From Asterias rubens (taxonomy: Eukaryota), in NCBI RefSeq assembly GCF_902459465.1, contig NC_047062.1, positions 248,001 through 312,000 of the forward strand: DNA of 64,000 bases. The letters run 5' to 3'. This document shows, one piece after another, positions 17,047 through 40,500 of the stretch; the first letter of the stretch is position 1, and each line of letters begins with the position of its first letter. The position numbers were made by a program, and so were the translations under genes. Below the pieces are notes generated by a model. That model saw only the letters and a program-made list of their open reading frames with translations, did not search any database and had not been told where the DNA came from.

Positions 17047-20000
17047 ATGACAGGTAAATCGATATTTTATCCAACATTTTGACATTATTATGAGTTTTGA
17101 AGTCGTTCGATTCAACGGTTTATTAGGGCTATGGCTACAGTAGCCTATGGATTTTTAGGCCTGTGGTAATGTATGAATGAAATCAAAATCGAGATGTTGT
17201 TATCGTTTCTCTACTCCAACCAATATTACATGTATTTTTGTCGCTATCTTTCATAGATGTATAGATCTAATTATGTAGTATTTTATTCATGTGATTTCCT
17301 GCTCTCAATAATTGTTGTAAGCGTATTAGTTTTCTAATTTAGTAAAGCGTATTTAAAATGTCCTATTATTATTATTATTATTATCATTATTATTTCATTT
17401 TATCACAGCATGCAAAAGAAAGATCTCATTTTCCTTTGTGCCGGTAACTCCTCGAGCCGGGCTACGTCCCGTAGCCTTAGATCTCAAGGGTCTTTCTCAG
17501 GATCCTCGCTGTTCCCAAAAGCGCTGCCTTCTGTAATAGATCTACCCTCACATTTGTCCCTATTTCATCTAGATGTTTCCCCAGTGCTTTGGGAATGGTG
17601 CCAAGTGCTCCAACCACCACGGGGACTACTTTTACCTCTACCTGTCAAATCTTACGAAGTTCCCTGGCCAGGTCCTGGTACTTCTCGATCTTTTCCATCT
17701 CCTTCGAAGCTACCCTTATATCACCTGGCACCGCTATGTCAATGAGATGACACATCTTCTTCGTCTTATCTAATAGCACAACATCCGGACGCCTATGTTG
17801 TATAACATGATCGGTCTGAATGTTAAAGTCCCATAGGATCTTGACCTGGTCGTTCTCTACAACTTTCTCCGGAACATGGTCGTACCATTTCGCAAGTACT
17901 TTGACACCATACTTCTTACACAGATCCCAGTGAATCACCTTGGCCAGCTTGTCATGTCTTCCTTTGTACTCCGTCTGGGCCATCTTACTGCATTCGCTAA
18001 CAATATGAAATACAGTCTNNNNNNNNNNNNNNNNNNNNNNNNNNNNNNNNNNNNNNNNNNNNNNNNNNNNNNNNNNNNNNNNNNNNNNNNNNNNNNNNNN
18101 NNNNNNNNNNNNNNNNNNNNNNNNNNNNNNNNNNNNNNNNNNNNNNNNNNNNNNNNNNNNNNNNNNNNNNNNNNNNNNNNNNNNNNNNNNNNNNNNNNNN
18201 NNNNNNNNNNNNNNNNNNNNNNNNNNNNNNNNNNNNNNNNNNNNNNNNNNNNNNNNNNNNNNNNNNNNNNNNNNNNNNNNNNNNNNNNNNNNNNNNNNNN
18301 NNNNNNNNNNNNNNNNNNNNNNNNNNNNNNNNNNNNNNNNNNNNNNNNNNNNNNNNNNNNNNNNNNNNNNNNNNNNNNNNNNNNNNNNNNNNNNNNNNNN
18401 NNNNNNNNNNNNNNNNNNNNNNNNNNNNNNNNNNNNNNNNNNNNNNNNNNNNNNNNNNNNNNNNNNNNNNNNNNNNNNNNNNNNNNNNNNNNNNNNNNNN
18501 NNNNNNNNNNNNNNNNNNNNNNNNNNNNNNNNNNNNNNNNNNNNNNNNNNNNNNNNNNNNNNNNNNNNNNNNNNNNNNNNNNNNNNNNNNNNNNNNNNNN
18601 NNNNNNNNNNNNNNNNNNNNNNNNNNNNNNNNNNNNNNNNNNNNNNNNNNNNNNNNNNNNNNNNNNNNNNNNNNNNNNNNNNNNNNNNNNNNNNNNNNNN
18701 NNNNNNNNNNNNNNNNNNNNNNNNNNNNNNNNNNNNNNNNNNNNNNNNNNNNNNNNNNNNNNNNNNNNNNNNNNNNNNNNNNNNNNNCAACCCCTTGTTG
18801 ATTTTCCAGCCAATCAGCTAGCTACGCACGTCCCTGATCTGGTTATGGGGGCTAACCAGCTCAAATCCCTTCCTCGAAGCCAAAAGTTTGACGGTGTGCT
18901 CATGTTTGCAGACATTTCAGGTTAGTCAGAATCAGATAGCCATTCATTAAGCTTCTTCCGCATTTGCTTTATTTGTTCATTGAATATCAAATTCTGTTTT
19001 TAAAAGACTCTGGGCACTATTGGTAATTTTCAACGACCAGTCTTCTTAATTGGTGTATCTCAACATTTGCATAAAATAACAGACCTGTGAAAATTTGAGC
19101 TCAATCGGTCGTCAAAGTTGCGAGATAATGATGAAAGAAAAAACACCCTTGTCACACGAAGTTATGTGCTTTCAGATGCTTGATTTCGAGACCTCAAAAT
19201 TTAATTCCGAGGTCTCAAAATCAAATTCGCGGAAAATTACTTCTTTCTCCAAAACTACGTTACTTTAGAGGGAGCCATTTCTCACAATGTTTTATATTAC
19301 GAGTAATTACCAACAGAGTCCACTGCCTTTTAAAAACACTGGACACCCATGGTAAATTGTCAAAGATCAGTCTCCTCACTTGGTGTATATGTATCTCAAC
19401 ATGTTATGTACAAAATAACAAATAAGTTTTTATGCTAACAATTATTTTGAGCAATTACCAATAGTATCCAGTTCCTTTAGAACAAAGTACTACAGTTCTT
19501 GATAATTTTCTTTTATGAGATTGAATTCATTTGATGATTTTGGCGTATCGTACATACATTACTGAAAATGACAATTGTAGGCCTGTGTTAGCTTTGCGAT
19601 ATTGAAGTATCTTGTTTATATTCAAAACATTTGTAATATTTGATGTTGCAACATGTCTTTAATCCAGGATTCACTGCGCTGACTGAAAGATACAGCATGA
19701 GCTCTCGCAACAGCAGCAGTGGTGCAGAAAAACTATCTGCTGCCCTCAATAGTTACATTGGAGAAATCGTGGAGAACATCATAGGATCTGAAGGAGATAT
19801 TCTGAAATTTGCAGGTTGGGAGAAACATTCTGGATGAGTTATCTTTGAGGCCATAATGCAGTACTCGTTGCATATTGGTTCAGAACAAAAACATTATTAT
19901 CTTTCTCAAAATGCTTAGTTATTATTGTTGTCGGATGTTCATTTTCACAATGACAAACTATAGCTATTTCTACCTCCATGGACAAACAAAATGTTACCGT

Positions 20001-23000
20001 ACACAGTGGGCCTAATTGTGCGTGCGTCTTAAACTGAGGGAGTGTTTGTATGAAGACTTTTACTTCATTTTAGTCACAACTGTCACATTTCTTGAGGTTT
20101 TTGAAGGGATCAAATAGGCCTACCGGATACCAATTATTCAGGCAAATCAACAAATACCACACACACTTGATACACCACCCAGGCAACAAATAAAAGCAAA
20201 GCTAAGGGCACATAGTCCTGGGGATGTAGTCCCGAATAAACCACTTGCAAATTTTTGCATCATTCTTTGGATTAGTAAGCTGTGGAACAGATAATCAAAC
20301 ATGATACATTTCAACCATGATACAGTTTTAAGTGTCAACATTAATTACTCCTTTTTTGAAGCGTTTCAATTGTACACAAGTTAATGGTGTAACTATTTGA
20401 AGGTAATCCCGAACTATATTATGTTTGCAGACAAAAAAATACATCTCCGCCGAGATTCGAACCCAGAACCTTTGAATAAGAAGTCCAACGCGCGGATCCA
20501 TTGCGCCACAGTGACGACGTTGTGTAACGTCAAGGGCAGTTCATTTCAATACAACATTTATTTCCAATTCCTTAATCAATATAAATACAATGTTAGCAAA
20601 GTGATACAAACATTTAAAGGGAAGGTACACGTTTGGTAATTACTCAAAACAAATATTAACTTAAAAACTGACTTGGTACCTAGCATTGGAGAGCTGTTGA
20701 TAATATAAAACATTGTAGTAAACGACTCCCTCTGAAGTAACGTAATTTTTGAGAAAGAGGTGATTTCTCACTAAAATAATAAAAGACTTCTAGATAGAAG
20801 TATTTTATTCCTATCTGAAAGCACACAAATTCGTCCAACAAGGGTGTTTTTTCTTTCATCATTTTCTCCCAACTCCGATGACCAATTGAGTTCAAATTTT
20901 CACATGTTTGTTATTTTATTAATAGATACATTAAGTGGGAACACTGGTCTTTGACAATTACCAACAGTGTACCTTCCCTTTAAGGAAATTGGGGGCACAG
21001 CCATGTAAGCGCAACTTGTGTAAGGGAGTGCCAATACAAAAAATACAAACAACACAAACACAAAAGAGTTAATACAGACAGAGCAGACAAAGCACAAAGC
21101 ACATGGCCAGCGAAGACTGTGACAACAAAGACACACAGCATTCCAGTGGTTACGTCCTACACTCAAGTAAGAATGACAATGAAATCAAGATAACAGGGCG
21201 AAAAACAGGAAGTCAAGTTTGAAGAAGGTATGACTTCAGATTACGTTGAAAACTGAATAGATTCTGACTATTCGTTAAACTTACAGGTAATTCATTCCAA
21301 TGGAGAGGTCTATGGTAACTGCATTATTGATTAATAGAAGGTACAGTAACAATTATTAGGTCGTATAGATACAGATGAGGAGCTGTATTTTGAGCCTTCC
21401 GTTTATGTTTTTATACAGGTGACGCATTTCTTGCACTTTGGAAGTTGCAGCGGGATAGCCTGGATTACACACTAATGAGAGTTATCAAGTGTGGTCTCCG
21501 TATTCAGGAAAGATGTGATAACAGAGAAACTGAAGTGGGTGTCAAGCTACGCGTCAAATTAGGTACATAGTTACCAATATTAACATGGCGGCGGACAACA
21601 AGTCTTATTATACACAATTCAATGCCCTTTTGGATTGATTTTTCTATGCAGTTTTTTATTTTTACGACCCCTAGTTATTATCATTTCATATATACCCCCC
21701 CCCCCCCCCCAACGTGTTTTTTTCTTTTTTTGAATGCTCGTTGGCCGGCTACGAGTGGGTAAGAAAAGGCTTGACCACCCTTGTGCATGATGCATGGTTC
21801 TCAGTTGGTGCCCAACATTCGGCGCTCGGCAGTGTACCGTACCCCCCCCCCCCCCCACCCCGTGTCTTTATTGTGTACATTAAATCTTCTGAATGCTGTA
21901 TTATAGAGGAATTCAGTTGTAGGTATATGCCTCGTTACTTTGCTTGGTGGACCGATCATATCACTTTGGTTGGTGAGTGAACTGAACATCGTTTTGTTTA
22001 TTAGGTGTTTCCATTGGTCCTGTTCGTGTAACCACTGTGGGCAATGAGGAGTCTCGGCACTACGTTCTCAGTGGGCAGGCTGTCGATGATGCCAATAAAG
22101 CTGAGAAGTTTGCTACTTCTGGATCCCTCGTCCTATCCCCCAAGACCTGGGCTTATACCCCTGAACATCAGCTCTTTGAGTACCGCATGCTGGAGGATCG
22201 AAGACATGTATCAGTAAGTTTCTTATAAAGTATATACTCATCACTTAAACTTTGCTACTTGATTCCAAGAAATGGTTAAACCCACAGATGTTCTTAAATG
22301 TCCTCTGTGGTCATTGTTGAGGATTACGAATCGGACTTTTGGGTCTCAGATCTATCAACCTTGTTGTTAATTTGGTTCAATCTCGTTTACAAGCTTGAGT
22401 CTAGAATTTTCTCAAATGTACATTGTTTTGAAGTATTCGTTATTTTGTTGTGAAGGTGCTTTCAATTATCGCCCAACCCATTGAGACGGTAGGTGCTAAT
22501 GTTGACCCAAGCTATGGTAACCAGTACAGTAGAAACCACAAAGACAGTGGTGGCAACCTCACAGGTAAGATATAGGTTAATAGTCGGGAACAGTATTATC
22601 TTGTTTATCTGATCTACCGAATACAACACTCAGCCATTTTGAAGTGATTTTTGTTTCTTCTACTTTTTCTCTTTTTAGGTTTTTTTGTTTTTTAATTTAT
22701 TTATTTATTTATTTTCAGGGGGAGGGGGGGGGGCACGTTACTCTGATTTTCAAGAGGAACATATTTAAAATAATTTTAAATTAATAACAACGCTGATAAC
22801 TTAAAACTCTGAGGACGACCTTAGAGTATAGACATAAACACAGAACAATCTGCCTTTTCTAACAATAAGACTTTGACATACTATATAAATAAGGAGGCAA
22901 AGTGGCATACTAAATATGATCAATATTGCAACAAGTGACTTTCTTTTCATTATAGCTGGACAAAGTGTGACTGTCATTCGACTGTCATGTTCCGCTCCAG

Positions 23001-26000
23001 CATCTACTGATGAGCACCATGCTGACGCAGTGGGAAGAGGTAAAGTCATTTTTCGTTTACATCTCTTTCAACGTTTGCATTTTTGAAAACTTCCCTCTGC
23101 ATATGATTTCGAATACATAAATTTACTATGAATATCTGACGATTAAAGCTCTACGTTTTACTACACAGAACGAAGTTGGGCTTTTCGGTCCAGTACCGAC
23201 GATGAGAAAGCAAGATTAAGATTATACATCATTAAACCGGTGCTGCAAAAGGTAGATAAAACTGCATGGTTCTTAAACAGAAAAATCAAATTTAAAGCTT
23301 GAGATATTCAAAAATTAGGGTGAGGCACGCCGCCAAAATGTAGTTTTTATTGTTTGAATGACACACAGGAGTACCCGGCGTATGCGTCACCTGACTTATA
23401 TGCGGGTAACTCAAAATTAATGAATCGTGTCGTGATTCGTTCATTTGAGTGCATTGATGCATGTCAGTATAAAAGCAGCGTCCTTAGCAACAGAATCCAA
23501 TTCAGGCCGCTGCTTACTCTGCTGTAGTGTTAGTGTCGCATTTCGGCAACAGCGTATTTTATATACGATATTAAGTTCGCAATGTCAACTGATAAAGATC
23601 AACCCGCGTTCAAGAGAAACGATGTGATAAACTCAAAGAATACTTCAATCATAAATTGGAAAGCATTCAAACTTCCAGCAAAGACACAGCTGATCAAGTT
23701 AACATTAAGGAGCTCACAAATTAATTGGAGGCAAAAGTAGTGACAAGACCCGTGATGTGAACTCAGCACAATTCGAAATCATGCGGACAAGTCGGAATCA
23801 CCCACGATAAAATCAAGGCTGCCTTCGAGAAGAGCAACATTCCAGAAGCCATTGAGGCACGTAAAGGAGCCGAAGGCATCATTGCAGAAAGAAGGAGAAC
23901 AATCAAAATTGCAGACTGTAGCAATTGGCTAGCTGGGCCGATGTACGAGAGCTAGACAAGACGGGGAATAATAGAACGCCAGAAGAGGCCAAAAGAATAA
24001 TAGTAGATGAGGAAGCCGCATTAAAAGCATCGATAGAAGAAGAAAGAAGTTTAACCAATCTCAAGATAACCCCGAGTATGGCAATGGCACTGCTGCTGAT
24101 TGGTATCTTTTTCGAGGTAAAAGAAGGGACATAACACCCACCTTTTGATCTTTGTAAATTCATATGCAGTTTAACAACGGTCCACTCCCATGATTTAATA
24201 AATTCTGAAACTAAATAATGTTTTCAAGGTGTGTTTATTGTGTGTCCTACAATAAAGTATGAGCGCAGCGAAGGAGCATGAAAATGTAGTTTTTATTGTT
24301 TGAATGACACACAGGAGTACCCGGCGTATGCGTCACATGACTTATATGCGGGTAACTCAAAATGAATGAATCGTGTCGTGATTCGTTCATTTGAGTGCAT
24401 TGATGCATGTCAGTATAAAAGCAGTGTCCTTAGCAACAGAATCCAATTCAGGCCGCTGCTTACTCTGCTGTAGTGTTAGTGTCGCATTTCGGGAACAGCG
24501 TATTTTATATACGATATTAAGTTCCACATTATGGAACATATTATGTTTTCCTTTTTCTTCTGTTGGTTTTTTCAATTCTTTGTTGACAGGCATGCCGGAC
24601 GCTGACGTCTGCTACAACTGCAGAATGCAAGGACACTGGTCCAGAGAGTGACCACTCCATATCGATTAGACCAAGACCTAGAGCCAGAGCTACCCACTCA
24701 CTCGGCTACACCACAGCAGCCCTAAGTCAGCATTAAAGAGGCAAACATGTTTGACAAGTTTGTATATGTATTTAGAGGTACGATGTGACTATTAATCATG
24801 TAAAATAACGTTCTTGAAATCTGACAAATTTATGGTCAAAGAAAGACACGCACAATTTTGGTACTAATTTTGTTCATCTCAATTGATCATGTCTGTGTTA
24901 TAAATGGTTATAATATCTCGTTTATGCCGCCCCTTGGTCCTTCCGAATTAATCAGCGTTAAATGAGAAAGTTTTCGAAATAGTTTTTATCATGGAATTGT
25001 TTAATCTCAAACAATCGTAGAGAAAACAGAGCCCTCTTTCATTGCGGGTCCCTTATCAGTAGCTTATCAATCAACTGATAAGAAACGATTGATTCTAGAT
25101 TTAAGCAGACTGAACAAATTCGTTCAGAAACTTCAAAATTGGAAAATAAGGTTGCTATTTCTTTCGCAAGTTTCTCTAATGTTCTAGCCTATTAGTCGTA
25201 ATATATTTCGACTAAAGTCTGGGTACCCTATTATATCGAAATTTCACCAACAGAAATCTTGATACCTGCATGCTGTTCTTGATCATATGATCTATGTTAA
25301 TGTGTAAAAGCTGGCATTTTTATTTCCTTGGTGGCCATCCTCTGTTTTTGGCCGATTTTGTGATCTAGTTACTTAACTGGGATTTAGGAATGTAGTATAT
25401 GAAAGGCCCGAAGGCATTTAAGAGGCAAACTTGTTTGACAAGTTTGTAGATTTATTTGAGGTACGATGTTATTATTAATCATGTAAGATAACGGTCTTGA
25501 AATCTGATAAATTTATGGTCAAAGAAAGACATGCACAAATTTGGTACTAATTTTGTTCATCTCTATAGATCATGTCTGTGATTCTGACTGGTTATATCTC
25601 GTTTTGGAAATGCCGCCCCTTGGTACTTCCGAATTAACACCAATAGTTTTTATCATGGAATTGGTTTCATCTCAAATAATCGTAGAGAAAACAGAGCCCT
25701 CTTTTATTGTGGGTCCCTTATCAGTAGCTTATCAAGCAATTGGTAAGAAACGATTGATTATAGAATTAAGCAGACTGAACAAATTCGTTCAGAAAGTTCA
25801 AACTAGATGATTGTAAAATAAGGTTGCAATTTCTTTCACAAGATTCTCTATAATTCGACTAAGTTTGGTTACCACCATATCGAAATTTCATCTAATGATG
25901 CAAAGTAACTTCATGGTTGTACCACCAGTAGTCTTATGCTGTTCTCGATCATATGATACATAAGAATGCGTAAAAGCTGACATTTTTATTTCCTTGGTGG

Positions 26001-29000
26001 CTATCCTCTGTTCTTTGCCGATTTTGTGGTCTCGTTACTTAACTTGGATTAAGGAAGGTATTATATGAGTCACCCGAATGGTTTAGAACAACAAAGAAAT
26101 AAGTAATGCGAAGTTTAATTTGAGAGAGATCCCGGTAGAAACCCGGAGGGCTTAAAGAGCCATGATTCAGATGAATCAAGAGAGTTGTCAAAGGATACAA
26201 AAGAACACTTTACACATGACATAGAAAACTTGATTTAATCATTATTAATATTATAATTATTATTATTAAATAAAGTTAAACAATCCGATACAGGAGGCTT
26301 ATGAGGAACCATCATATGAATTGTTTGGAATGAACTATAATGCGAAGTTTATCTTGAGAGAGATCCCGGTAGAAACCCGGAGGGCTTAAAGAGCCATGAT
26401 TCAGATGAATCATTGAGAAACGGTGACATGTACTAACTACTAACTTATTAATAATAAACTGTTATACTAATTGTCTACAACTACACTGTATTCTAATGTT
26501 TAGTACGAACTACACTATGCAGTTTAACAACGGTCCACTCCCATGATTTAATAAATTCTGAAACTAAATAATGTTTTCAAGGTGTGTTTATTGTGTGTCC
26601 TACAATAAAGTGAAACTGTTTTTCATGCGTATGAGCGCAGCGAAGGAGCATGAAAGTACAAATTTAGCGAACGCAAATAATTTATAGGAACCACCCAACC
26701 CTGGTTGATGGACAGCCACTGTTGCATCAGCTGTACGTTGTCAACTTTAATCCATTGAATATTTTGATTGTGAGTTAAATGTGTCATATAATGTCGTTTA
26801 AATTTGATTTTGTGCAAAATTCTGTATTTATTTTCAAAACAAAATGCACAGTTTAAAATATAGTACCGGTGTCGTAGGGAAATCTGTCCGCGGAGATTCT
26901 TTCCACAGTTCTCCATTTTGGGGGACAGAATATCCAGGGGACGGAATCTCGTGTCATATTGATAGATGAGTGAGTCTTGTTTTCTTGTAGATCGATGATG
27001 ATCTTCCTTTAGAGTATCTCTCTGAGATGAGACAAGTAAGTATAGTCTTCATTAATCTCGTAGTGTCATCTTCAGACCACGAGAGTGAGAAGCGCAATCT
27101 ACATACTGCTTTCAACGTAGTATACGACGACATGAAGGAATTTCAAGGTAAATGTCTACTAGACTTCTTGCATTCTTATAGCGGTCATTGTTAAATACTG
27201 TACAATGAGTGAAACAATTTATATTTTGTTTTATTTCAAAACTCAATTATTAAATAATGAACATTCCCTTTCTTTGTTTTATCAGGTTGTCTAAACAAAG
27301 TGTTCATGTTTGACAAGGTATGTAAATAACTAGGTAAGCTAAAATAAACATCGAAACTAACAGTGACTTGGTACCTTCTTCTAATCTCCAGATCGAAAAC
27401 CATAAACGCCAACAAATTTTCACAAACTTGGTAACTCCACCAATAGTTATTAGGATTTGTCATTTATTTTTGAATAGGGATGCACATTTCTTGCTATATT
27501 TGGTCTTCCTGGTTATAAACACGAGGACGACTGCGCACGCGCACTACAATGCTCATATCGACTACTGGAACACCTAAAAGTTACCCCAAATGTCACGTAA
27601 GTATATAAATGCCGGACCGGGTGATAACCAATTTGTTACGTTGTTACTTGTCTGTTGAAGCTGTCTGTGTAAACAGATTACTATTCTGTATGTTTATGTT
27701 TGACATCTTTGACCAAACTCAACCAGCTACAATGAACAACTTCTCTATCTACGCTACATCTGCAAAACTGCTAGACGAAGTTTGGCCAAATCAAACACTA
27801 CATTACATGATGTGTATAGTCTAGTTACCTTCATTACAGTCCTTTGCGAACAAACCCTGATAAAACACTCCACTTTTTAAAACATTAATTCACATTGTGT
27901 TTTATAATACTGGGTGAATATTTCAACAGGCAAGCTTCTATCGGTGTGACAACTGGATCTACTTTCTGTGGGGTTATTGGACATATACATCGACATGAAT
28001 ACACTGGTAGGTTTATGCATACAACACGATCTATCCCCCCCCCCCAAATAAAAAAACCCCCAAAAAACCAAAAACAAAAAACAAGCAAGTAAACAAACAA
28101 ACAAACAATCGTATAAGAGCATAAAGAGGTTGTAAAATTAGGGCGTGGTTTGTTCCCCTTCCATTGACTAGCATTGCTTAGCACTCATCGACTATTGTGA
28201 AGTTTTTCCATTATTCGATTTTACCATAAACGAACTATCGTCAGTCACTCTCTGGAAGTTTTGTTGTAATTTTGTGTTAACTTTTGAAGATTATTACTTT
28301 CGTCCCGGCTAATGTGTTTTTGTGGAATTTGTTGTTCACTTTTCTTTTCCTTGTTTCGTTCTTTTAACTTGAATCCTTTGTATTTGATCAGTGATTGGGA
28401 GGAAAGTGAACATGGCTGCCAGACTCATGATGCATTATTCTGGTAGAGTATCTTGTGATCCTGAGACGTTTCATCATTCCAAACTACCAAGACACTTCTT
28501 CCGTGAACTTCCTCATAAAGAGATGAAAGGTGTCCGGAATGCTGGGGTCATCCAGGAATTTGTCCAAGGAGAAGAGTAAGAGTTACGATCAAAGTTGGTC
28601 TTTATTTATTTAGACACTTATATTCAGAACGGAGAATAGTTCATACACTTGTTAGCAACCCCAAATGTTTCCCGTTTTTTGACGCAGATCAGAGACAGTG
28701 ACAGGAAATACGGTCCCGGAGTTCGATTATCCACTTCTTGGTAAGAAACTCTGCTTGTTATCAATTTCTTGGTAATCAACTCTGCTTATTATCCACTTCT
28801 CGGTAAGAAACTCTGCTTGTTATCCACTTCTTTGTAAGAAAATCTGCTTATTATCCACTTATTGGTAAGAAACTCTGCTTGTTATCCACTTCTTGGTAAG
28901 AAACTCTGCTTGTTATCCACTTCTTTGTAAGAAACTCTGCTTATTATCCCTTTCTTGGTAAGAAACTCTGCTTATTATCCCTTTCTTGGTAAGAAACTCT

Positions 29001-32000
29001 GCTTATTATCCACTTCTCCCTAAGAAACTCTGCTTATTATCCACTTCTCCCTAAGAAACTCTGCTTATTATCCACTTCTCCCTAAGAAACTCTGCTTATT
29101 ATCCACTTCTCCCTAAGAAACTCTGCTTATTATCCACTTCTCCCTAAGAAACTCTGCTTATTATCCACTTCTTGGTAAGAAACACTGCTTGTTTTACACT
29201 TTAAACTCAAACTCCTTTCACTTTTTTGAAAAGGTCTTACTTTTTCTTTGAAACAATTAAAAAGCTCTGGGAGTGACTGTGGTCTGAATGAAAACGCACC
29301 AACAACAAGATAATCCAAAGAATGTTTTTAAATAAAGTTTCGTTGTTACTGAATCATCTCTTAATGTTTCGATATCGTTTCCAGGGCGTGATAAGGAGAT
29401 GGGTACATTTTTAAATGAGTTAGGTATGATTCGAGAACATAAGGAACGAGGTGAACATCGCCGTGTTATAGTGTTTGATGGTCAAGCAGGAATCGGTAAA
29501 ACTAGAATGCTAGACGCTGTCATCAAGAAGGCTGCCATTGAAGATAATCTGTAAGTTTTGACAATACTCTAACTCGGTCGAATCCATAAACTCACTTGGT
29601 CATATTAGTATTGATATAATACACTATGTGCACAGCCACAACCATGGCTACATTTTTTGTTACAAAGACCTTTGCAGATCTTGTATTCGACAAACTCGAG
29701 CACTTCTTATTCATCATTGACACAGCGATTGTTATAGTGATGTATAAATAACAAAGAGATACAAACTGCTACTCAGTGGGTTTTTTAATAATTATGTTCA
29801 CGTAACAAAACATGTCTACCTATGATGGTGGCTGTTCACATGATCTGAACACTTAGTTCACCAGTTACAACTTGCAAAACAAAAAACATTTTCGAGAAGG
29901 AAAACGAAAATGGTATTCGTAACCTGGTGGTAATAGAACTTTCAGAAACAAATGTTTATGTTTATATAGGATTTGAGGCATTGCATGGTGAGGTATCAAT
30001 GTATGTTTGGTTTGCGGTAACACCATGTGTGTGTCTACTTGCCAGGTAGAGTTTGTTCTTAGAGAACTGTCTTGCTTTATTCTACTGCCGCGGAGTAGAT
30101 AATCGGAGGTTCGGGAGACTAGCTTGCTCTAGTCATCATCGGAAGACTAGTCGATGACTAGAGCAAGCTAGTCGAAACGTTGAGACCAATTCAGAACTGA
30201 CTCCGCGGCAGTACAGTTAATTACGATCCTATAAGCTAAAGTAGTAGCTAGTCCAGTCTATTTTCTATACCATCCGCCCTGGTAACAGTTAAGAAGCAGG
30301 ACAGTTCTTTTCAGAACTGAGAAGTCTCCCGAACCTCCGATTATCTACTCCGCGACAGTACAATATAGCAAGACAGTTCCCTAAGAACAAACTCTACCTG
30401 GCAAGTAGATATACACATGGTATTACCGCAAACCAAATATAAAAAAAAATTTATGTTCATATTAATTTCTTTCATCCTACTTGTATGTGTGATTCTAGGG
30501 TGATATCCAGCGCTTTGACGATGACTGATGCTAATGTACCGTACTATACTGTTAAGCGTCTAGTAACCGTACTTCTACAAATGGAAGATTGCGCAAGTCA
30601 CGTGGAACGGGAGCATGCGCTGTTGGAGCACGTTCAGAACGAGGCTCTACGGGAAGATCTCTGCCTTCTGAACGACTTGTTTGTTCTTAAAGTACGATTG
30701 ATAAAAGTTCTTGCATACCATGACTGACCAGATGTTTTCCTATCAGCGTGTTAAGTCATATCATTATAATGCATTAGTTCTTGTTTTCATTACAATGTTT
30801 TCTAATGTTCAATACTCCATCACTGAACTTGTTGCCACTTTCAGCTGTTGTTCTTTATTGATTGTTTACCTTAGTTACCAACAAATCCAAGATTTCTGAA
30901 CATGACGAGTGAGCAGCGGATACGTGAGCTTCATAATCTTATTGCCAAGATCGTCCACCAGGTCAGTCAGTATTGAATAAGAATAATAGTAAAGGTCTCA
31001 GTCCTCAGTAGAATACTAAAGACACAAATCTTACTGTCACTCAAATGTCTTTCATTTATTTTGAATCGCATTTATTGTTTACGTCTAACTTTGAGTACAT
31101 TGAGTATGTTTTTAATTACATTGAGTATGTTTTTGATTAGGAGACTGATCAAAATGAAGTCCGAGGGCTCGGTTAAAAAGAGATCTCCCTTATAAAAACC
31201 ATGTGTTTTTTTTTTTTTTTGCAAATCGGTTGATTTTGATTGTTCTCCTCAATCCTAGTTCACTCTCCACCAATGTGTAATTTTTGCCGTGGACGACGCC
31301 CACTTTATCGATCCAGACTCTTGGGGCTTCTTGATTGATTTTGCTGCTGCTTCCTCAGCCGTTTGTGTTCTGACTATGAGACCCTTTAAACCCGACAAAC
31401 CACCATGCATAGCTGCCCATCGTGTTCTATCCCATCAAAACACCTTGCATATTAAACTCGGCAGTCTACGCTCTAGTGAGATGGCATCATTGGCGTGCCA
31501 GCTTCTTGATGTAGTCAGAGTGCCCCAAGATCTTGTTGGGTGAGTCATCAAAATATTTTACAAAAACTGTGTGGAAAAGCTCCAAAACATTATATGTTCA
31601 AATCATGGACTCTTGCGGAGTTTCCGTTATGAAAAGAAAATATGAACCTATTCTTTGAATTGTCGTTTCATCACACAGAATACTCCAGAAGAAGAGCCAC
31701 GGCATTGCATCTTGGTGTGAGCAGCTCGTTCAGGAGCTCATGGCAGTTAATCAACTCATGATCGTTCCTGAGGGTAGCAAACAAGCAGCCGTAGCTGATG
31801 ACGAAGCTAGTCACATAACACCGAGTATTACTGTGTTACAGAAGTCTAAAGAAAGTAGTGCCAATGGTGGCACTACTGGAGCTGGTCGCAGTCGACGATC
31901 TAGCGTAGATAGCGGGGTGGGTATACCGTTTGACATGAACTGTTAGTTGTAGGCAATAGATTCCGAAACGTATCATTAATTGGCCAGCTGCGAGCGAAAC

Positions 32001-34375
32001 AGAGTGATTTGAAAGTAAGCCAACTGCCAATTTCCGTCCGTCCCTCCGTCGTTGGGTGCGTCCAACCGTCCGGATTCAGTGGAATGTTCAAGTTTAAGCG
32101 TGAAGCTGCATCATTCAAGTATTGAGTTGTTTTTTAAATTCAAAATCCAAAATCCAAAATCTAAAATCCCATAGTGACAGTCATGTTTTGTGGTTCCCAA
32201 CCATTGATCTCCATTATACTGACTGGATAGAACATCGCGTCCAAACGCAGGCCGCGCGCGTACTTTTTGAAACGGGTGAAAACCGTTCGTCACACGAAAT
32301 GCGTTGTACACTTTTAAACGGAGTTGCTGCAAACAGGGAGAAGTTTTCGTCCTTTTAATTGTCATTTTGGGGATTTAAAATGTTGGAATCAGATCAAACA
32401 AACTAAAAATGCTTATGGTGAAGGTGTGCGCGGCTGTTAATCGCCGGAGGAGGGAAAACTGAGTCGGCAAATGGATTGTCTTTCCACAGAAGTAAGTAAG
32501 CCTTTGCATTTTTTTTTTAATGATTCATATTATTATTATATCTAACGTTACAAATATTAGACAGGAAATTTAAACTATCATTCATAAAAATAATTATTAA
32601 AGGCCAAGTATTTGTTATTTTTATCGAGCAATTATTGTTTTCACTCCGTTACAAATGGTTTTCTGGAATCGACGAGGACGGGAAGCCCGGGATCCAACAA
32701 GGTGTTTGTCATAGCATCAATAATTAAAAGGTTCGAGAAAGAAGACGGTACAAACATTAGAAGTTCGTTGAGAGGATCAGTCGTCTCAGAAATAGCCGGC
32801 TTCGTTATTTGTGACCGAAATAAAAGTATTTATTTCTGGCGATACAGTAAAAAAGGTTATGAAAGTTTTGCTGTTGGGATTGTTTCTCTTTCTTGTCCTT
32901 TTCCCTCAATTTTAGCGAGTATGTAGTTCTCACTCTAGTCTTAGTTTGCATAGAACTACTCGAATTTTAAATTATAGGAGCGACTCTTGTTTTGTCTTTA
33001 AGTTTATATGGTTTATTGTCAGTTTCTCAATGTACTGAAAGAATTAAAAAAACATGTACTTAAATCCCAATACAGTTTCTCGTCCGAGTTTTTGTTTAGA
33101 AATAATGTCATTATCATAATATTAATAGGGCATTTGATAGACAAAAATGTAAAGTATTATTAGTTTGCCTTATTTGCATTTCAATCACACATTTTTTTTT
33201 CACACTTTTCGTCATGTTTCCCCCTAATTTCTGTTCTCAATTTACAACTTCAACTGACAGACTCAAACCCGACCAAGTGCACATTAATTTACCCGTTTAA
33301 AGGAATTGCGCCGCCATTGTTCGGCCGCGTGTTTATGCACGCAGCATAGCGCAATGTCCTATCCAGTCAGTATAATGGAGATCAATGTTCCCAACCATGT
33401 TTATAAGGAAATGTAGAAGTTTTCGGGGGATAAAAGCCAAACTAAACAATGCTCTCTTGATTTTAAAGAGCCAACGTCAAAAAAATGTGGTTTTTTTTAA
33501 ACGGACTAATAACTTTAACCAATACAACCATGCCAAATTGCAGCAGACACGCACATCAAATAATTGCACATGAAACTCGGGATTATTTCTGAAAATCTCT
33601 AAGGCAATTTTTTGTTTAATGCCGTAACTCGTTGTTGTAATGAAGTGTCAGCTTGAAACTTGGACTAAATATTGCCACTATAGATTTATATATCAAAATA
33701 ATATAACTCACAAAAGGACAAGTTAATACTCAAGTTGAATGAGCTAAAACAGCAAAAGCATAAACATGTTTGAGAATAGTTTATTCCAAAAGTGCCAATT
33801 CTATTCTAGTTTTTTATTATTATCATAACTCGTGTTTCTGTCTGTGTAAGATACCAACGAGTCACCATACATCCATGCCTATTTGTATATCTTCCCTGTC
33901 GGCCCTCAGTCATCCTTTTTCACTCCCATATCGAACCAAGTATAGACAGTGGTCAAACGCAAGAATTTGTAATATCCCCACCCCTAACATCAGTTGATCA
34001 ATGATTTGTTTTTTTCTATTAATTAGTCATTGTTTATCTATGGGGCGATTTGCAGCTCGATATAGCAGCTTCACTGAACTATTAACGTTAATTTGGACAT
34101 TGTACAGTGTACTGTTATTTTAGAGAGAGAGTAAACGTGCTAAATGTTTTTTCGGTTTGTCTTTAACAGTCACCGATGTTTCAGGTACCTCAATTGGCAA
34201 CCCACATGCTAGACCAGCTACGTGAGATGCAAGAAGAAGGTTTACAAGATGATGATATAGATGAAGATGAAGAGCCTAACATGGTGTGTGTTGTAGCATC
34301 TGGAATCAAACTAGCAGATTTACAGATACCGGATTCAATGACAGGTGACAATAATATAATGCTCGTTAATATTGG

Positions 34376-34407
<32 letters not shown>

Positions 34408-37400
34408 TGTCCACTAATAATTGACACACTTTTGTAGTTGATATTTACTGAATGTGTTTGGTTCTTCATCAGGCATGATGCTGGCCCGTATCGATCACAT
34501 GAAACCATCAGAGCAAATGTTGGTAAAGTGTGCTGCCGTTCTTGGGCTAACATTCACCCGCCATATGTTGGAGATCATTGTTCCCAACACCACTGGCTGG
34601 AAGATTCGTCGCCTCCTCCATATCCTGATGAAAGGTGGAGTTTTCGAGTGTGCTACATACCACCTTACAATCCATGGGTTGAGCTATGGTGTCAACCAAC
34701 GTATAGCAAGCTCTGTCTCAAGCCATTTCGGCACTCTGGGTCACGGTAACCGACTTACGGCTGGTATTATCTGCCACTGTCCAAAAACTGCGATTCAGGA
34801 GTCTGATGTGGAGGTTCCGACTGGGTCGAGTTATATGTTCATGACAGACTGCAGCCATTTGAGATTTACCAGTGCTTTCATGCAGGAGACAGCTTATGGG
34901 TTGTTTCTCTCTGAGCAGCGACGTAAACTTCACCGACAGGCGGCAGAATATCTGGAGTCCCAAGCACATAAGTGCACGCCCTGCGGTGGAGGTGACTTCC
35001 TACCCGGTAGTCATCAATATCTTGGGGAGACTAAAATAACAACAAAGAAGACTCGAGAGGAGACTACACGTAGTAAACAAAGCTTGAAGCCGGACAAGGT
35101 TAAAGATATCACAACCGGGGAAAAACATTCGCATAATGGTAGGTTCGAGCTTCAAGTTGCTCTGTAGCATTTTGTTAATTGATTCGTATCATCGGTGTAT
35201 CTCATTGTTTGTTTTTTATGTTAAATTGAATGATTATTTTGTTAAATGACATAACATTACATTTGACTAATCATGAAACGAAATCGAATGACCCTTTTTA
35301 GTAGCATTCGATTTCGCGCGAAATAGAATAGTTTGGTGGTTAGATTGGCTGCTCATTTGCCGAAATTGACCGAGAATTGCTCATTTGCCGAAACTGACCG
35401 TGAAAACCTATAGAAAACCTATATTATAAGTTTCTCGGTCGAATTCGGCAAATGAGCAGCCAATTTCATTTTCATGCGTTCGCATTAAAGCTGTTTTGCC
35501 TCTCCAGTTGTTACTGCGTTTCAAATTCAGAATTCGGCCATTCAATTTCGTTTTAAGTCGAGTAAAATTCCTTTAGCACTATGTATGTTCAATTTAGTGT
35601 ATCGTAATTTTTTTTTCGTGGCACACACGCCTCAAGAAGCGTCTGCGAATTCGAATGCTGCTTTGATGAATTGTTAAATGGAATGATTATTTTGTTAAAT
35701 TGAATAACGCAACAATACATTTGACTAATCATAAAACAAAATCGAATAACCCTTTTCAGTAGCATTCGATTTTGCGCGAAATAGAACAGCTTGAAAGTTA
35801 ATTGCTCATTTGCCGAAGAAACTGCATCCGAAATAACATAATAAATTCTACTTGTTTACGCTGTTTGATTTGTGTGGTTGCGCCCATTTGCTGGGTACAG
35901 GCCTATACCTCTTAATTTGCTTTCGGATGCAAGGAATACACCATTAAGCGCTCATGATTCATGAAATAAAACCTAATTAGCCATATTTACAGGTATATTA
36001 CTTTAATTAGCAGTCATTCAAACTTTACTAACACAATCTTTAGTTTATTACAAGCATTCAATTTTTGAGACCTTTTATTACTATTTATAAGCCATTGGAC
36101 CCTTTCGGTTCAGAAAAAAAATAAAAGTTCACAGATTTACAAATAACTTACACGGTTTACAGAAGGCAATGGTGAAAGACTTCTCTTGAAATATTATTCT
36201 ATGAAATGCTACTTTTTGAGAAAACAGCAAAACAATATAAATTCTCGTTAACGAGAATTACGGATTTATTTTAAACACATGTCATGACACGGCGAAACGC
36301 GCGGAAACAAGGGTGGGTTTTTCCGTTGTTTTCTCCCGACTCCGATGACCGATTGAGCCTAAATTTTCACAGGTTTGTTATTTGATATAGAAGTTGTGGT
36401 ACACAAAGCGTGGGCCTTGGACAACACTGTTTACCGAAAGGGTCCAATGGCTTTAACGAAAACATGTCCTTAATTTGTTTCAGGAAGAAGTGCCCGGCAA
36501 GTCACCTTCGATGAAAACAGAGGAGGTAAACAAACAGAATACTGCCGAAACTTTGTGGAACATCTACTGTATTCCACAGCAAAATAAACTGAAACTAAAA
36601 CGATAAAGACAGTTCCTCGTCCAATTTGGATCAACAATCAACTCGTATTCATAATACATTTTGTTCCATTAATTCTAGCTTGATTTTGAGGCATTCTGAG
36701 TTCTTGATTGAATGTCTTTTTTACTCGTAATATAGAAACCGAAAACTACGTTCAGGACCACACAGACAACATGATGAACACCATTAAGAAAAGCATCAGG
36801 CGTCGTAGTGTAGCATTTGTTGCACCACACGGTGAGAACGAGTCACATGTTGTGCTGAATGATGACGAAGGTAGTGATGAAGAGGACAACAACCCGTCTA
36901 TCGCTCCGATTAAGTACCATCAATCCCGGAGAGCTACGCTTACTATACGTAAAGGATCACTAGACAACAACCTTAGCGTTATCAGGTACAATGAACACAA
37001 CAACTCTCAACAAACTTAAACTTGTTCATGTATTCAAGCTTAACTTGTGTTTATTTCGGAGACAAGGCGTATTATGTTCGAGAGTGCCAAAAAAATAACC
37101 GCATGCCTTTAACATTCTTAAGGAAACAACAAGTTAACCAAGCGTTTTTAAGATTGCACAAATTCCAGAATTGACTGCCCAAAAGTGAAATTGAATGACT
37201 AAACACACGCCTCAAAATAAACTCCTGCGAACTTTAACGCAGCTTCGATGAATTGTTAAATTGAATGGTTATTTTGTTAAATCAAATGACTTAAAAGTAG
37301 ATTTGACTTGCCTTATAAAGAAATCAATTGAATGACCCTTTTCAGTAGCATTCGATTTCGTGCGAAATAGAATAGGCTGGTAGTTAGATTGGCCGCTCAT

Positions 37401-37554
37401 TTTCCGAAATTGACCGAGAAAACCTATAATTTACAGTAAGTCTATAAAATTATTAAAAACATTGGACAACAATAGAAAAATGTTAAAAAGTAAAAGAATG
37501 CAGAATGAGTCAAAATGCAAAATAACCCCCAACATGCAAAAGCAATCCAACCCA

Positions 37555-37585
<31 letters not shown>

Positions 37586-40500
37586 AATGTATATCTAAAA
37601 ACATGAAAATGACATAATGATAGGCATGTCTAGTTTTTTGTAGTTGTATTTTTTGTTTGCCCCTACCTATAATAACGGTTGTCGAACTGCCGCCCTGTTA
37701 TATTTGTCCAGCACCTCCGAATATGTTTGGTCATAGCAAGATGGGACTCTACAAATTAATTGTATTTTTATTATTAATAATTATTTAGAAGAAAATTCCT
37801 AGAATTTGTATTTAAAAAAATATGATGATGGCAACATTACATTGAGCGTTCAATATCAGCGACATATACTTGTTGTCCTGATTATATATAGCTTTGGTGA
37901 AATCTATGAGTCGCCGATTGCCAACCGATCTGCAAGCCCAAGTTCTCTGGATTTGGAGCGAATGGATCTTCGAGAATGCCGGTGTGCTGATGTTCTAAAC
38001 ACGGTGTACCCTCAGCTAGTGCGTCATTGGAGAGCAGCCTGCTATACAGTCAAAACTGTTCATTTCCTATCTGAGGCTGGTAGTGCTGCAGTAACCACTG
38101 GCAACCATTTGCAGGTTGCATTTTGTTTATCATTCTACTACTCGTTTAATAATCAAGCATCGTTTAATCACAAATTCTTGCTTCTAATTATTAGAAGGCC
38201 TACATCACTCTGTAAAGCGGGCCAAAAAATTCTCTGCGCAACAAATTAATATGATTAGAACTCCATGAAAGAGGACTGCAGTTGTTGTTAACCTCGGAGG
38301 AGTACAGACAAAGAGTCTGGGATATTTTATTGTGTATGTGACTTGAGTTTATAGTCATAAAGCTTATATGCATTATAACGATGTATGCTCATTCATCATT
38401 AAGTGTGATATTGGTTTAACTTCAGGCTCTTTCCTACCTACATGAAGCTACCAGCATGATTAAGGATGTCGATAGTGGTCACAATCCTTTGGCAGACGAT
38501 CCAGCAACAGCTGTGACAATTGACAGGCAAGAGCGCGCCAAAATACAAAGTACAATGGGTCAAGTAAGTTTGATACGGCTATTTAATAATTGCAACTCGT
38601 TAATAACCCACTATAGTCAACCACTCTGTATACATGATGTCGTAAGATTACAATGATTAAATATATCAGGGCTCAAGTTTCACAAGTTAATTTTGGTATA
38701 TTTCATTTTCGCCCAAGTGACAAAACAGTGACATCATTGTTGTTTAAGGCCGTACGATTTGAATTGTTTCCAGTTGAAATTTGTATATAAATGTTATAAA
38801 TTGTTATGCCTATAATGCGGAACACTTATTTGACTAACAGGCTTTGTTTAAAATGGGCCGCTTAGACGAGTCCATGCCCCACTTCAACCAGGCCCTTAAA
38901 CTCCTTGGCAACAGGCAGCCGTCTTCCAGAGCAGGAGCTCACTTTAAATTGTTGATAGAGGGCGTACGTCAACTCTTTCACGTTTGGTTTCCGGAACGGG
39001 CCATCGGAAACGCCTCGTAAGTGATTAAAATTTGACTTAATTATAATAGAATTTGTAGCTGTTAACAAGGTATTCCTTATTTATTTATAAAACATCAAGT
39101 TTTCCCCCAAAACAGCCTAAGAATTATATTTTTATCGTTTATATTATAGGGGTCTGGTTTAAACACATAACCTTGACAGCCCCTGTCTGTCCATGGTCTG
39201 TCTAACTTGTAAAGCTATAGATTTAAAATAAAATAAATACAATAAAATAAGTAGGTCTAGTAGAAGATAATTTAACAGTGGATCACAGCATTACTCGTCA
39301 ATTGTTCATTCCTCCATCAGTAAGCGCATCCAGTATATTGAGCAAGCACGGTGCCTATCTAACATGTGGCATTCTTACAATCGTCAACAAGACAGTCTAC
39401 GGTGTCTTCTAGCTGCCACACAGCAGGTTAATCTAGCAGAGAAGGCCGATGAAGATTTGCACGAGGTAGACACTAGTACCTGCTATCATTGGTGTTTGTA
39501 GGTCACTGTACATGTTGGACCAAAATTATCTTTCAAACAGTTTTGATTAAATAATAAAACAAGTGGTTTTTTTTTTAATTGTGTGTTGCAATAATTAATA
39601 CAAGTTGTCTCTTGATAAACTTTGATATTCGTTAACCTTGAAAACTTTATTTCTACCGTGGCAGTTTTTAGAAACTAATCCAAACTTGTTTTATTCCTAG
39701 CTAATAAGCGCCTACAATAACATCATTGCTTCTTGTCAGATGAGAAAGTGGATAAGTACGGGCGATCACTACGAACAAGTTGCGATGAAAAGGTACAAAT
39801 TTACAGACGGGTTGCAAATGACGTCATTGACCGCCATCTTTGACAAACAATGGCACTGTGCAGCGTGTACACGGGCTGCTCGTGTTTCATAATAGCGGCC
39901 AGTTACTTTTATGGTGACTTAATTTACGGCAGTTATATAGACATGATAGCTTCTCCAATGTACAGACAAACAGATCGAAGACCAAGGAACAGGAACGGAC
40001 GGCATCTGGAGGTCGGACATATTGAACAAAGACGTAGACAAAAATATGCAAAAGAGGAAAATTTCTGAGTAACCCTGTGAGATTTTAGGGTGGCTGTCTA
40101 ATCTAATTACTTTGACTGTTTCAGATGCATCGATTCACCAGTTGGCGTTGGTCCTGATGACCTCATTACCATAGGTCAACTTTACAAAGAAAGTATGAGA
40201 GTTCGTCTTGGTAATGGTCGGATACAAGGCGCTCTAGACACGGGTTGGTTATTATACTCACTACGCATACATGGGTTTAAACAAGAAAACAAACATTTGA
40301 CTCCACATGTTGTTTTAACATAAAGCAAGTAGTTCAGTTTTGTTTAATCAAAGAGTCGTATGCAAAGTTCATGTTCTCTGACATTTTCAGCAAATTAATA
40401 ACAACCAATTTAAACGTCGCTTTTATTTTATTTCCAGATAAACTGAAATCTCAAAACGGTCATAAAGTTTAATATAATTTCTGTATAGGATATAGTGCAC

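What the first reader, a model, noticed from the sequence alone, without database searches (positions are those of the whole stretch)
28726..29190. Tandem array of amplified 5' splice sites at the catalytic/regulatory boundary of sAC: a possible route to an sACt-like truncated cyclase
Seen: the 31-bp unit contains the last 14 nt of the exon (encoding YPLL) plus the donor GTAAGA. Of 15 copies, 10 keep GT (28741, 28772, 28803, 28834, 28865, 28896, 28927, 28958, 28989, 29175). Five consecutive copies have lost it (CCCTAAGA, 29020-29144). Only the first donor keeps the frame. Donor 2 shifts the frame, and donors 3 onward include an in-frame TAA at 28773-28775, which stops translation at about 516 aa, after C1+C2 and before the P-loop domain. 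Established: mammalian sACt is a splice-derived C1+C2-only isoform with much higher specific activity than full-length sAC. Inference: copy-number or sequence variation in this minisatellite could tune the ratio of full-length to truncated (or NMD-degraded) sAC.
Basis: partly seen in the sequence, partly recalled or inferred. Interest (0 to 1): 0.8.

Follow-up and report, generated by a model that had tools for sequence, protein, structure and literature searches.

The report
Splice-junction minisatellite in starfish sAC gene
A 31-base repeat has copied the end of one exon and its splice signal about 15 times into the next intron of a starfish soluble adenylyl cyclase gene, but the available transcripts use only the first, original signal, as in known human genes of this kind such as F7.

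Summary
A 31-bp x 15.4 tandem array (28726-29201) starts in the last 15 nt of a 53-nt coding exon (28688-28740) of a complete sAC/ADCY10 gene and repeats the donor TTG|GTAAGA into the intron. Ten copies keep GT and five (29005-29159) have lost it. Every non-first donor gives a 516/517-aa C1+C2-only product.

The exons translate exactly to the RefSeq Asterias rubens sAC protein. The unit occurs nowhere else in the 418-Mb genome. Asterias amurensis has the same array at the same junction, with 14 copies in a different order. Patiria miniata and another, unidentified relative lack it, so it arose by local amplification in the Asterias lineage.

The functional reading has no support. One 4.8-kb spliced RNA contig and the annotated proteins of both Asterias species all use the first donor. 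No truncated Asterias protein is on record, and sea urchin sperm are reported to contain only full-length sAC. The two raw RNA-seq runs had no reads on the gene, so minor donor use could not be counted.

This is a new member of a known kind. Human F7, CBS, IFI6, LMNB2 and PDGF have junction minisatellites in which the most upstream donor is used exclusively or mainly. Interest is modest.

The parts
18809..46639 (+). Complete sAC (ADCY10-like) gene, about 29 coding exons
   Evidence: tblastn of RefSeq A. rubens protein P0254 (1787 aa) maps residues 3-1787 exon by exon, mostly at 94-100% identity. The cluster representative carries PF00211 and PF13191.
28392..28575 (+). Exon encoding the end of catalytic domain C2
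   Evidence: Aligns to human ADCY10 residues 406-462 in PDB 4CLF/4OYA, E = 2.5e-15. It is a piece of the X5 spliced contig. Boundaries were resolved.
28688..28740 (+). 53-nt exon encoding (E)SETVTGNTVPEFDYPLL(G). Its last 15 nt are the exonic part of repeat copy 1.
   Evidence: Sequence. The spliced frame is open. The X5 contig has 52 + 1 nt between the flanking exons, and its bin depth equals 52 nt x 23.2. The [YF]P[LIM]LG motif is conserved in the echinoderm and amphioxus sAC proteins compared.
28741..28746 (+). Authentic 5' splice site GTAAGA (TTG|GTAAGA), the one used
   Evidence: X5 spliced contig. Annotated proteins read DYPLLG|RDKEMG.
28726..29201 (+). 31-bp minisatellite: 15 full copies (28726-29190) plus an 11-nt partial copy
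   Evidence: TRF. Register table. The unit is unique to this locus in the whole genome.
28757..29004 (+). Copies 2-9, each with a GT pseudo-donor (28772 to 28989). Copy 2 is weakened to GTAATC.
28773..28775 (+). TAA in frame with the exon when donor 1 is not used. It ends the product at 516 aa.
29005..29159 (+). Copies 10-14: five identical units with TGG changed to CCC, so they have no GT and cannot act as donors
   Evidence: The same CCC variant is present in A. amurensis copies 2, 12 and 13.
29160..29190 (+). Copy 15, the last pseudo-donor TTG|GTAAGA at 29175
   Evidence: Reproduced in the independent contig L013 and in the X3 contig.
29191..29384 (+). Unique remainder of the intron, ending in tttccAG. 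It is colinear with the whole roughly 210-nt intron of a relative that lacks the array.
29385..29550 (+). Next exon, (G)RDKEMG...GQAGIGKT..., the P-loop of the regulatory STAND-like NTPase part
   Evidence: X5 contig piece 29384-29550. Weak NACHT, AAA_16 and NB-ARC hits on the P-loop.

Best explanation
This is an exon-intron junction minisatellite in the soluble adenylyl cyclase gene of Asterias.

**Origin.** A 31-bp segment, made of the last 15 nt of a 53-nt exon plus the first 16 nt of the intron, was amplified in tandem in the Asterias lineage. This lengthened an ancestral intron of about 210 nt to 644 nt and placed 9 extra GT-bearing copies of the donor downstream of the real one. The likely mechanism is slippage or unequal exchange. 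It may have been seeded by a short resemblance between the exon end ATTATCCACTT and an intron word 31 nt downstream, GTTTTACACTT.

**Turnover.** The array has since changed by gain, loss and spread of variant units, including a donor-dead CCC variant.

**Splicing.** The most upstream donor (28741) is selected. The downstream copies are silent pseudo-sites inside the intron, as shown experimentally for the human F7 IVS7 minisatellite. The array is therefore most likely a tolerated, near-neutral repeat.

**Shown:** the anatomy, uniqueness in the genome, presence in two species and absence in outgroups, and first-donor use in the dominant mRNA.

**Inferred:** the mechanism of origin, the 5'-to-3' selection rule in a starfish, and neutrality.
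For: **Array and register:**

**Uniqueness:** all 14 genome-wide matches with up to 3 mismatches lie in the array, and the 801-bp region is single-copy.

**Gene identity and completeness:**

**First donor used:**
- The X5 spliced contig (4,799 nt, depth 23.2) has pieces 28391-28575 and 29384-29550 separated by 52 record letters plus one ambiguous G, which is the 53-nt exon.
- Its bin depths equal the exon nucleotides in every bin outside the array. There is no extra depth on copy 1's intron part or on copy 2.
- The proteins annotated for A. rubens and A. amurensis read ...EFDYPLLGRDKEMG....

**Comparative data:**
- A. amurensis locus L010 has 31 bp x 14.4 at the same junction, with the same consensus but a different order of unit variants.
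- The flanks are 95-96% identical.
- The array is absent in Patiria miniata, in L017 (intron about 210 nt) and in L015.
- Collapsing the array to one unit makes Asterias colinear with L017.

**A second silent junction duplication in the same gene:** A. amurensis has an 85 bp x 2 duplication, and the annotated proteins ignore it.

**Precedent:** in F7 IVS7, 5-9 identical donors are present and only the most upstream is used. [quoted passage not shown]
Against: - Transcript evidence is thin. It consists of one assembled contig from one run plus gene models, and contigs drop rare variants.
- Both raw RNA-seq runs had zero depth on all sAC exons, so junctions could not be counted.
- X5 shows extra low-depth contigs on the 3' half of the array (bins 28941-29254: 5.3 and 8.2, against 23.2 for the mRNA), while other introns are at 0. 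I read these as multi-copy k-mers from traces of unspliced RNA, but a minor array-containing RNA is not excluded.
- In two human precedents (CBS, IFI6) the two pseudo-sites nearest the authentic donor are used as well.
- The array has persisted across about 4-5% sequence divergence. The second copy has an impaired donor in both species, by different changes (GTAATC versus CCC). This hints at selection acting on donor competition, so the array may not be strictly neutral. The chance of that coincidence is roughly (6/14) x (3/13), about 0.1.
Confidence: 0.72

Rival explanations
1. Leaky pseudo-donors. A minority of transcripts splice from copy 3 or later, because copy 2 is weakened. This gives mRNAs with a premature stop that are degraded by NMD, so array structure modestly sets sAC dosage. 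This is the CBS 31-bp VNTR situation.
For: - Six copies have a 9-mer identical to the authentic donor, and copy 3 differs only at position -2.
- CBS and IFI6 use the two pseudo-sites nearest the authentic donor (PMC1557585 introduction).
- The copy-2 donor is impaired in both Asterias species, by different mutations.
[quoted passage not shown] 2000, seen only as a reference title).
- X5 has some array-derived contigs.
Against: - In X5 there is no extra depth on copy 1's intron part, on copy 2, or (almost none) on copies 3-7. Their unique k-mers would be required by any such transcript. This suggests such transcripts make up less than roughly 10% of the canonical mRNA in that sample (my inference).
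- Neither species has an annotated alternative isoform at this junction.
- In F7, pseudo-sites up to 91% consensus value do not compete at all.
Confidence: 0.17
2. The array is a route to a functional sACt-like 516-aa cyclase (C1+C2 only), whose level is tuned by copy number or sequence variation.
For: - Every non-first donor, and intron retention, would give the same 516/517-aa product, which ends just after the region aligned to human sAC-cat.
- Mammalian sACt is splice-derived and about 3-fold more active.
- Copy number differs between the two species, 15 versus 14.
Against: - No transcript or protein evidence was found.
- The stop would lie upstream of more than 20 exon junctions, which is the usual NMD context.
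- The array is absent from other asteroids, which would then lack this route.
- Five copies have lost GT, and the copy-2 donor is impaired in both species. If selection is involved at all, this is the direction expected of selection against use.
Confidence: 0.04
3. The reiterated U1-binding sites act positively. They could serve as an intronic enhancer that helps define the small 53-nt exon, or as U1 'telescripting' sites that suppress the intronic poly(A) signals just downstream (ATTAAA at 29250-29255, AATAAA near 29331).
For: - The exon is short.
- Poly(A)-signal hexamers lie 60-140 nt after the array.
- The array has been kept in two species.

The rest rests on general knowledge of U1 function, which is my own and was not tested here.
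Against: - Relatives without the array splice the same 53-nt exon.
- One third of the copies have lost the U1 site.
- There is no direct test.
Confidence: 0.04
4. The array is an assembly artefact.
For: The exact count of 15 copies in this species rests on one assembly. Short-read contigs break inside the array.
Against: - An independent assembly of A. amurensis has 14 copies at the same site.
- Independent contigs L013 and X3 reproduce the 3' edge, including a CCC copy followed by a standard copy.
- The units carry structured variants rather than being a collapsed or duplicated read.
Confidence: 0.02

Closest known systems
Human F7 intron 7 37-bp VNTR (Borensztajn et al. 2006, PMC1557585)
   Same: - The first monomer spans the exon-intron boundary, so the authentic donor is followed by several pseudo-sites of identical sequence.
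- Only the most upstream site is used.
- Copy number is variable.
   Different: - The unit is 37 bp with 4 nt of exon and 5-9 copies, against 31 bp with 15 nt of exon and 15 copies here.
- Here one third of the copies have lost GT and copy 2 is weakened.
- The host is an echinoderm, not a mammal.
- Pseudo-site competence and the scanning rule have not been tested here.
Human CBS 31-bp VNTR at the exon 13/intron 13 border (Yang et al. 2000 and Lievers et al. 2001, as cited in PMC1557585 and PMC2630376)
   Same: - The unit length is the same, 31 bp.
- The copy number is similar (15-21).
- It spans the exon-intron border and reiterates the donor.
- Units carry single-nucleotide variants.
   Different: - In CBS, two pseudo-sites are reported to be used, and repeat number is associated with enzyme activity. 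No such use is seen here.
- The sequences are unrelated, so the origins are independent.
Junction minisatellites of human IFI6 (6-16), LMNB2 and PDGF (listed in PMC1557585)
   Same: A tandem repeat reiterates an exon-intron junction. In LMNB2 and PDGF only the authentic donor is used.
   Different: Unit sizes differ (LMNB2 100 bp, PDGF 81 bp). IFI6 constitutively uses two extra donors that keep the frame. Here no alternative donor keeps an open frame.
Mammalian sACt isoform of ADCY10
   Same: It would be a C1+C2-only product ending at the same domain boundary. The human catalytic construct is 1-469, and the product here would be about 1-505 plus an 11-aa tail.
   Different: Mammalian sACt arises by skipping exon 12, not by choosing an alternative donor in a repeat. 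No such product has been detected in Asterias, and it is reported absent from sea urchin sperm.

Membership tests
Exon-intron junction minisatellite (F7 IVS7 / CBS type) | Head-to-tail tandem array of a unit of 10-100 bp | tested here: met
   TRF: period 31, 15.4 copies, 91% matches, no indels.
Exon-intron junction minisatellite (F7 IVS7 / CBS type) | The first monomer spans a real exon-intron boundary, so the donor is reiterated in the intron | tested here: met
   Exon 28688-28740 is defined by the spliced X5 contig and by protein models. The unit starts at 28726, 15 nt before the donor.
Exon-intron junction minisatellite (F7 IVS7 / CBS type) | Pseudo-sites identical or nearly identical to the authentic donor | tested here: met
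   Five downstream copies have the identical 9-mer TTG|GTAAGA. Three differ at position -1 or -2, one is weakened (GTAATC), and five have lost GT.
Exon-intron junction minisatellite (F7 IVS7 / CBS type) | The most upstream donor is used physiologically | tested here: met
   Met for the dominant mRNA only: the X5 spliced contig and the RefSeq proteins of two species. Minor use was not measurable.
Exon-intron junction minisatellite (F7 IVS7 / CBS type) | Copy-number polymorphism within the species (VNTR) | not tested
   Only a between-species difference was seen, 15 versus 14 copies with rearranged variants. Short-read contigs break in the array.
Exon-intron junction minisatellite (F7 IVS7 / CBS type) | Pseudo-sites are competent when upstream sites are inactivated | not testable with these tools
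   This needs a minigene or mutant analysis.
Soluble adenylyl cyclase (ADCY10) | Two class III cyclase domains followed by a P-loop STAND-like region and a long C-terminal part | tested here: met
   - The window encodes all of P0254 (1787 aa).
- The 90% cluster representative carries PF00211 and PF13191.
- The C2 end aligns to human sAC structures, E = 2.5e-15.
- The P-loop exon gives weak NTPase hits.
- An exon-wise PF00211 scan of the genome did not match in the window. I attribute this to short exons.
sACt-type truncated isoform | An mRNA with a premature stop after C2, and a protein of about 50-58 kDa | tested here: inconclusive
   No such contig or protein was found. However, the raw RNA runs had zero depth on the gene, so rare forms cannot be excluded.

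The most novel reading that the evidence does not exclude
In Asterias, leakage from the first donor to the pseudo-donors, or retention of the array-bearing intron, depends on tissue or allele. It would produce either a sACt-like 516-aa cyclase that lacks the regulatory part, or NMD-coupled down-tuning of sAC. Array composition (dead CCC units, the weakened second unit) would be under selection to set that leak.
Probability: 0.07. Interest if true: 0.6.

Novelty: new member of a known kind. Interest (0 to 1): 0.3.

Why it matters
This is a clean, natural non-mammalian example of many identical 5' splice sites competing for a single acceptor, in a gene of physiological interest: sAC, the pH/cAMP sensor of echinoderm sperm. 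Two sister species carry differently arranged arrays, and close relatives lack the array, so there is a ready comparative series. That series could test whether the 'most upstream donor wins' rule established for human F7 also holds in an invertebrate deuterostome. It could also test whether selection removes or weakens the nearest pseudo-sites. As it stands, the array does not change what is known about sAC isoforms.

Tried and rejected
- **Read laying.**
  - The two raw RNA-seq runs (X11, X12) gave zero depth on every sAC exon, so no junction counts were possible.
  - My 4.7-kb stretch included a very high-copy repeat (29569-30510). It filled the joints and loose-ends tables, so any rare joints in the array were not listed.
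- **Exon-wise PF00211 search of the genome.** No match in the window. The exons are too short and sAC domains too divergent. The gene was identified by PDB alignment and full-length proteins instead.
- **Pfam on single exons.** Only weak P-loop hits.
- **Protein fragments reading from exon E/F into the array, and truncated Asterias proteins of about 516 aa.** None found. This is weak negative evidence only.
- **The look-up of encoding contigs for the Acanthaster protein P0002.** Not on record.
- **Naming the species of GCA_014845345.1 through the literature.** No hit, so the phylogenetic bracket of the array's origin stays loose.
- **TE- or satellite-derived array.** Considered and rejected, because the unit is unique to this locus.
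- **A minus-strand gene.** Considered and rejected, because there are only short spurious ORFs.
- **A hairpin masking the donors.** The unit can form only a weak 5-bp stem around GGU, and it is present at the authentic site too. This was not computed further.
- **The search of earlier findings.** It returned only this same finding and unrelated notes.


Full report
**1. The observation**

The sequence at 28726-29190 is as described. TRF reports one array at 28726-29201, with period 31, 15.4 copies, 91% matches and no indels. In register, copies 1-9 and 15 carry GT at the expected offset, and copies 10-14 are five identical units in which TGG has become CCC, so GT is lost. A 24-nt core with up to 3 mismatches matches 14 times, against 0.00 expected in shuffles.

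The unit consists of the last 15 nt of an exon (ATTATCCACTTCTTG) followed by GTAAGAAACTCTGCTT. The acceptor of that exon is AG at 28686-7, the exon is 28688-28740 (53 nt), and the next exon starts at 29385.

I spliced each GT-bearing copy to 29385 in silico:
- Only donor 1 keeps the frame.
- Donor 2 gives ...DYPLLGKKLCLLSISWA* (517 aa).
- Donors 3-15 all stop at TAA 28773-5 (516 aa).

**2. The gene**

- Exon 28392-28575 aligns to residues 406-462 of human ADCY10 in the solved catalytic-domain structures, E = 2.5e-15.
- A profile-free scan of 1.84 billion representative proteins with the 237-aa exon 34454-35164 returned full-length sAC proteins.
- Their close relatives are named adenylate cyclase type 10-like in the starfish Acanthaster, Patiria and Asterias, and carry PF00211 and PF13191.
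- The 90% cluster of the Asterias amurensis protein contains RefSeq XP_033624542.1 of Asterias rubens (P0254).
- My eight-exon splice of the window is an exact substring of P0254.
- P0254 maps over the window from 18809 to 46639.

The window therefore holds a complete, intact sAC gene of A. rubens or something indistinguishable from it. The genome size of 417.6 Mb agrees with my memory of that species' assembly, which I did not verify.

The 53-nt exon encodes the conserved ...PEF[DE][YF]PLLG motif. The next exon carries the P-loop GQAGIGKT.

**3. Origin and age**

The 31-mer with up to 3 mismatches occurs 14 times in the 418-Mb genome, and all 14 lie in this array. The 801-bp region is single-copy. 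It is therefore neither a dispersed repeat nor a satellite.

*Present in Asterias amurensis.* The orthologous locus (L010) has the same array at the same junction, 31 bp x 14.4 with the same consensus. It has 14 copies, of which copies 2, 12 and 13 are the CCC type. The G-first and TTT|GT variants are shared but arranged differently. The flanks are 95-96% identical. The array and its main unit variants therefore predate the split of the two species and have since been reshuffled.

*Absent elsewhere.*
- Patiria miniata: single junction ...TTACTCG|GTAAGA, intron about 1.26 kb, no repeat.
- Contig L017 of GCA_014845345.1, a closer relative of unknown name: identical exon end GATTATCCACTTCTTG|GTAAGA, intron about 210 nt.
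- L015, a more distant relative.

If the Asterias array is collapsed to one unit, exon, intron and next exon align colinearly with L017 (299 versus 305 nt). The array is therefore a pure local amplification of the junction.

The partial 16th copy GTTTTACACTT resembles the unit start, and L017 has ATTTTACGAACACTT at the matching place. I infer that this short resemblance, spaced 31 nt from the exon end, seeded the first duplication.

Independent contigs (L013, X3) reproduce the 3' edge of the array.

**4. Which donor is used**

Two sequencing-run searches found no run on record as RNA among the holders. They did find runs whose contigs hold 96% of a pure-exon query but only about 30% of the exon-intron query.

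*Evidence for donor 1.* One of these runs, X5, carries a 4,799-nt contig at depth 23.2 that skips all introns.
- Its pieces 28391-28575 and 29384-29550 are separated by 52 record letters plus one ambiguous G. That is exactly the 53-nt exon, so donor 28741 is used.
- X5 bin depths equal 23.2 times the exon nucleotides in every bin. This includes the bin holding copy 1's intron part and copy 2, and the bin holding the unique 3' intron.
- The annotated proteins of both Asterias species also read DYPLLG|RDKEMG.
- The only annotated alternative in A. amurensis lies elsewhere, at residue 1108.

*What X5 shows inside the array.* Only the bins over copies 3-15 show extra depth: 0.79, 5.34 and 8.23. 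I read this as multi-copy k-mers from traces of unspliced RNA passing an assembly threshold that single-copy intron k-mers fail. On that reading, RNAs containing the unique copies 2-7 are below roughly one tenth of the mRNA in that sample. This is an inference, not a measurement.

*What could not be measured.* The two raw RNA-seq runs had no reads on any sAC exon, so real junction counts were not obtained.

*Other negative results.* Searches of a 5.8-billion-protein collection found no fragment reading from the spliced upstream exon into the array and no Asterias product of about 516 aa.

**5. Comparison with what is known**

Minisatellites whose first monomer spans an exon-intron boundary are a described class (PMC1557585):
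- F7 intron 7: 37 bp, 5-9 identical donors, only the most upstream used. The pseudo-sites are competent but do not compete, even at 91% consensus value.
- CBS: 31 bp, 15-20 copies, two pseudo-sites used.
- IFI6: 25 pseudo-sites, the two nearest the authentic donor used.
- LMNB2 and PDGF: only the authentic site used.

The Asterias array matches this class feature by feature, and it happens to match CBS in unit length and copy number.

On the sAC side, mammalian sACt arises by skipping exon 12 and has about 3-fold higher specific activity (PMC12802110). Sea urchin sperm are reported to contain only full-length sAC (PMC12867704).

**6. Interpretation**

The best-supported reading is a lineage-specific, tolerated junction minisatellite with silent pseudo-donors.

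Two details hint that donor competition has mattered:
- In both species the second copy is disabled, by different changes (GTAATC in the window, CCC in A. amurensis). Human precedents show that this copy is the one most likely to compete.
- Donor-dead units have spread.

The coincidence has a chance probability of about 0.1 ((6/14) x (3/13)), and unequal exchange can spread any variant. I treat it as a lead only.

A. amurensis also carries a second, two-copy duplication of another sAC exon-intron junction (85 bp, L010:6059-6224). It too is ignored by the annotated proteins.

It has no positive evidence, and several observations lean against it.

**7. Verdict**

- The kind is known, and this is a new member in an echinoderm.
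- Interest is modest at 0.3. The value lies mainly in offering a natural comparative model for 5' splice-site selection.

Noticed in passing
L010:6059-6224 (A. amurensis); single copy at window 22533-22617: A second exon-intron junction duplication in the same gene. An 85-bp unit, made of the last 33 nt of a C1-domain exon, GTAAGA and about 46 nt of intron, is present twice in A. amurensis but once in the window. The annotated proteins carry the exon tail (DSGGNLT) only once.
   Followed up: partly
window 29569-30510: The intron after the P-loop exon holds a very high-copy repeat. Depth is about 500-600 in both raw RNA-seq runs and above 1e5 in contig runs, with many opposite-strand joints (30100 to 30334-30341). 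This suggests a transcribed foldback or MITE-like element.
   Followed up: no
window 42404-43749: A 35-bp x 38 tandem array (96% matches) lies in the last intron of the sAC gene, between the exon at 42064-42192 and the terminal exon at 45998.
   Followed up: no
window 1-2514 and 6353-9302: Two long satellites lie upstream of the gene: 60 bp x 42 and 59 bp x 50. The window lies about 250-310 kb from the start of contig 1, so they may be subtelomeric.
   Followed up: no
window about 35158 (residue 1108 of the protein): A. amurensis isoforms X1 and X2 differ by 14 aa at the end of the large 237-aa exon. This is an annotated alternative donor unrelated to the array.
   Followed up: partly
window 29250-29255 and about 29331-29336: Poly(A)-signal hexamers (ATTAAA, AATAAA) lie 60-140 nt downstream of the array, inside the same intron. 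Both are conserved in A. amurensis. No evidence of use was found.
   Followed up: no
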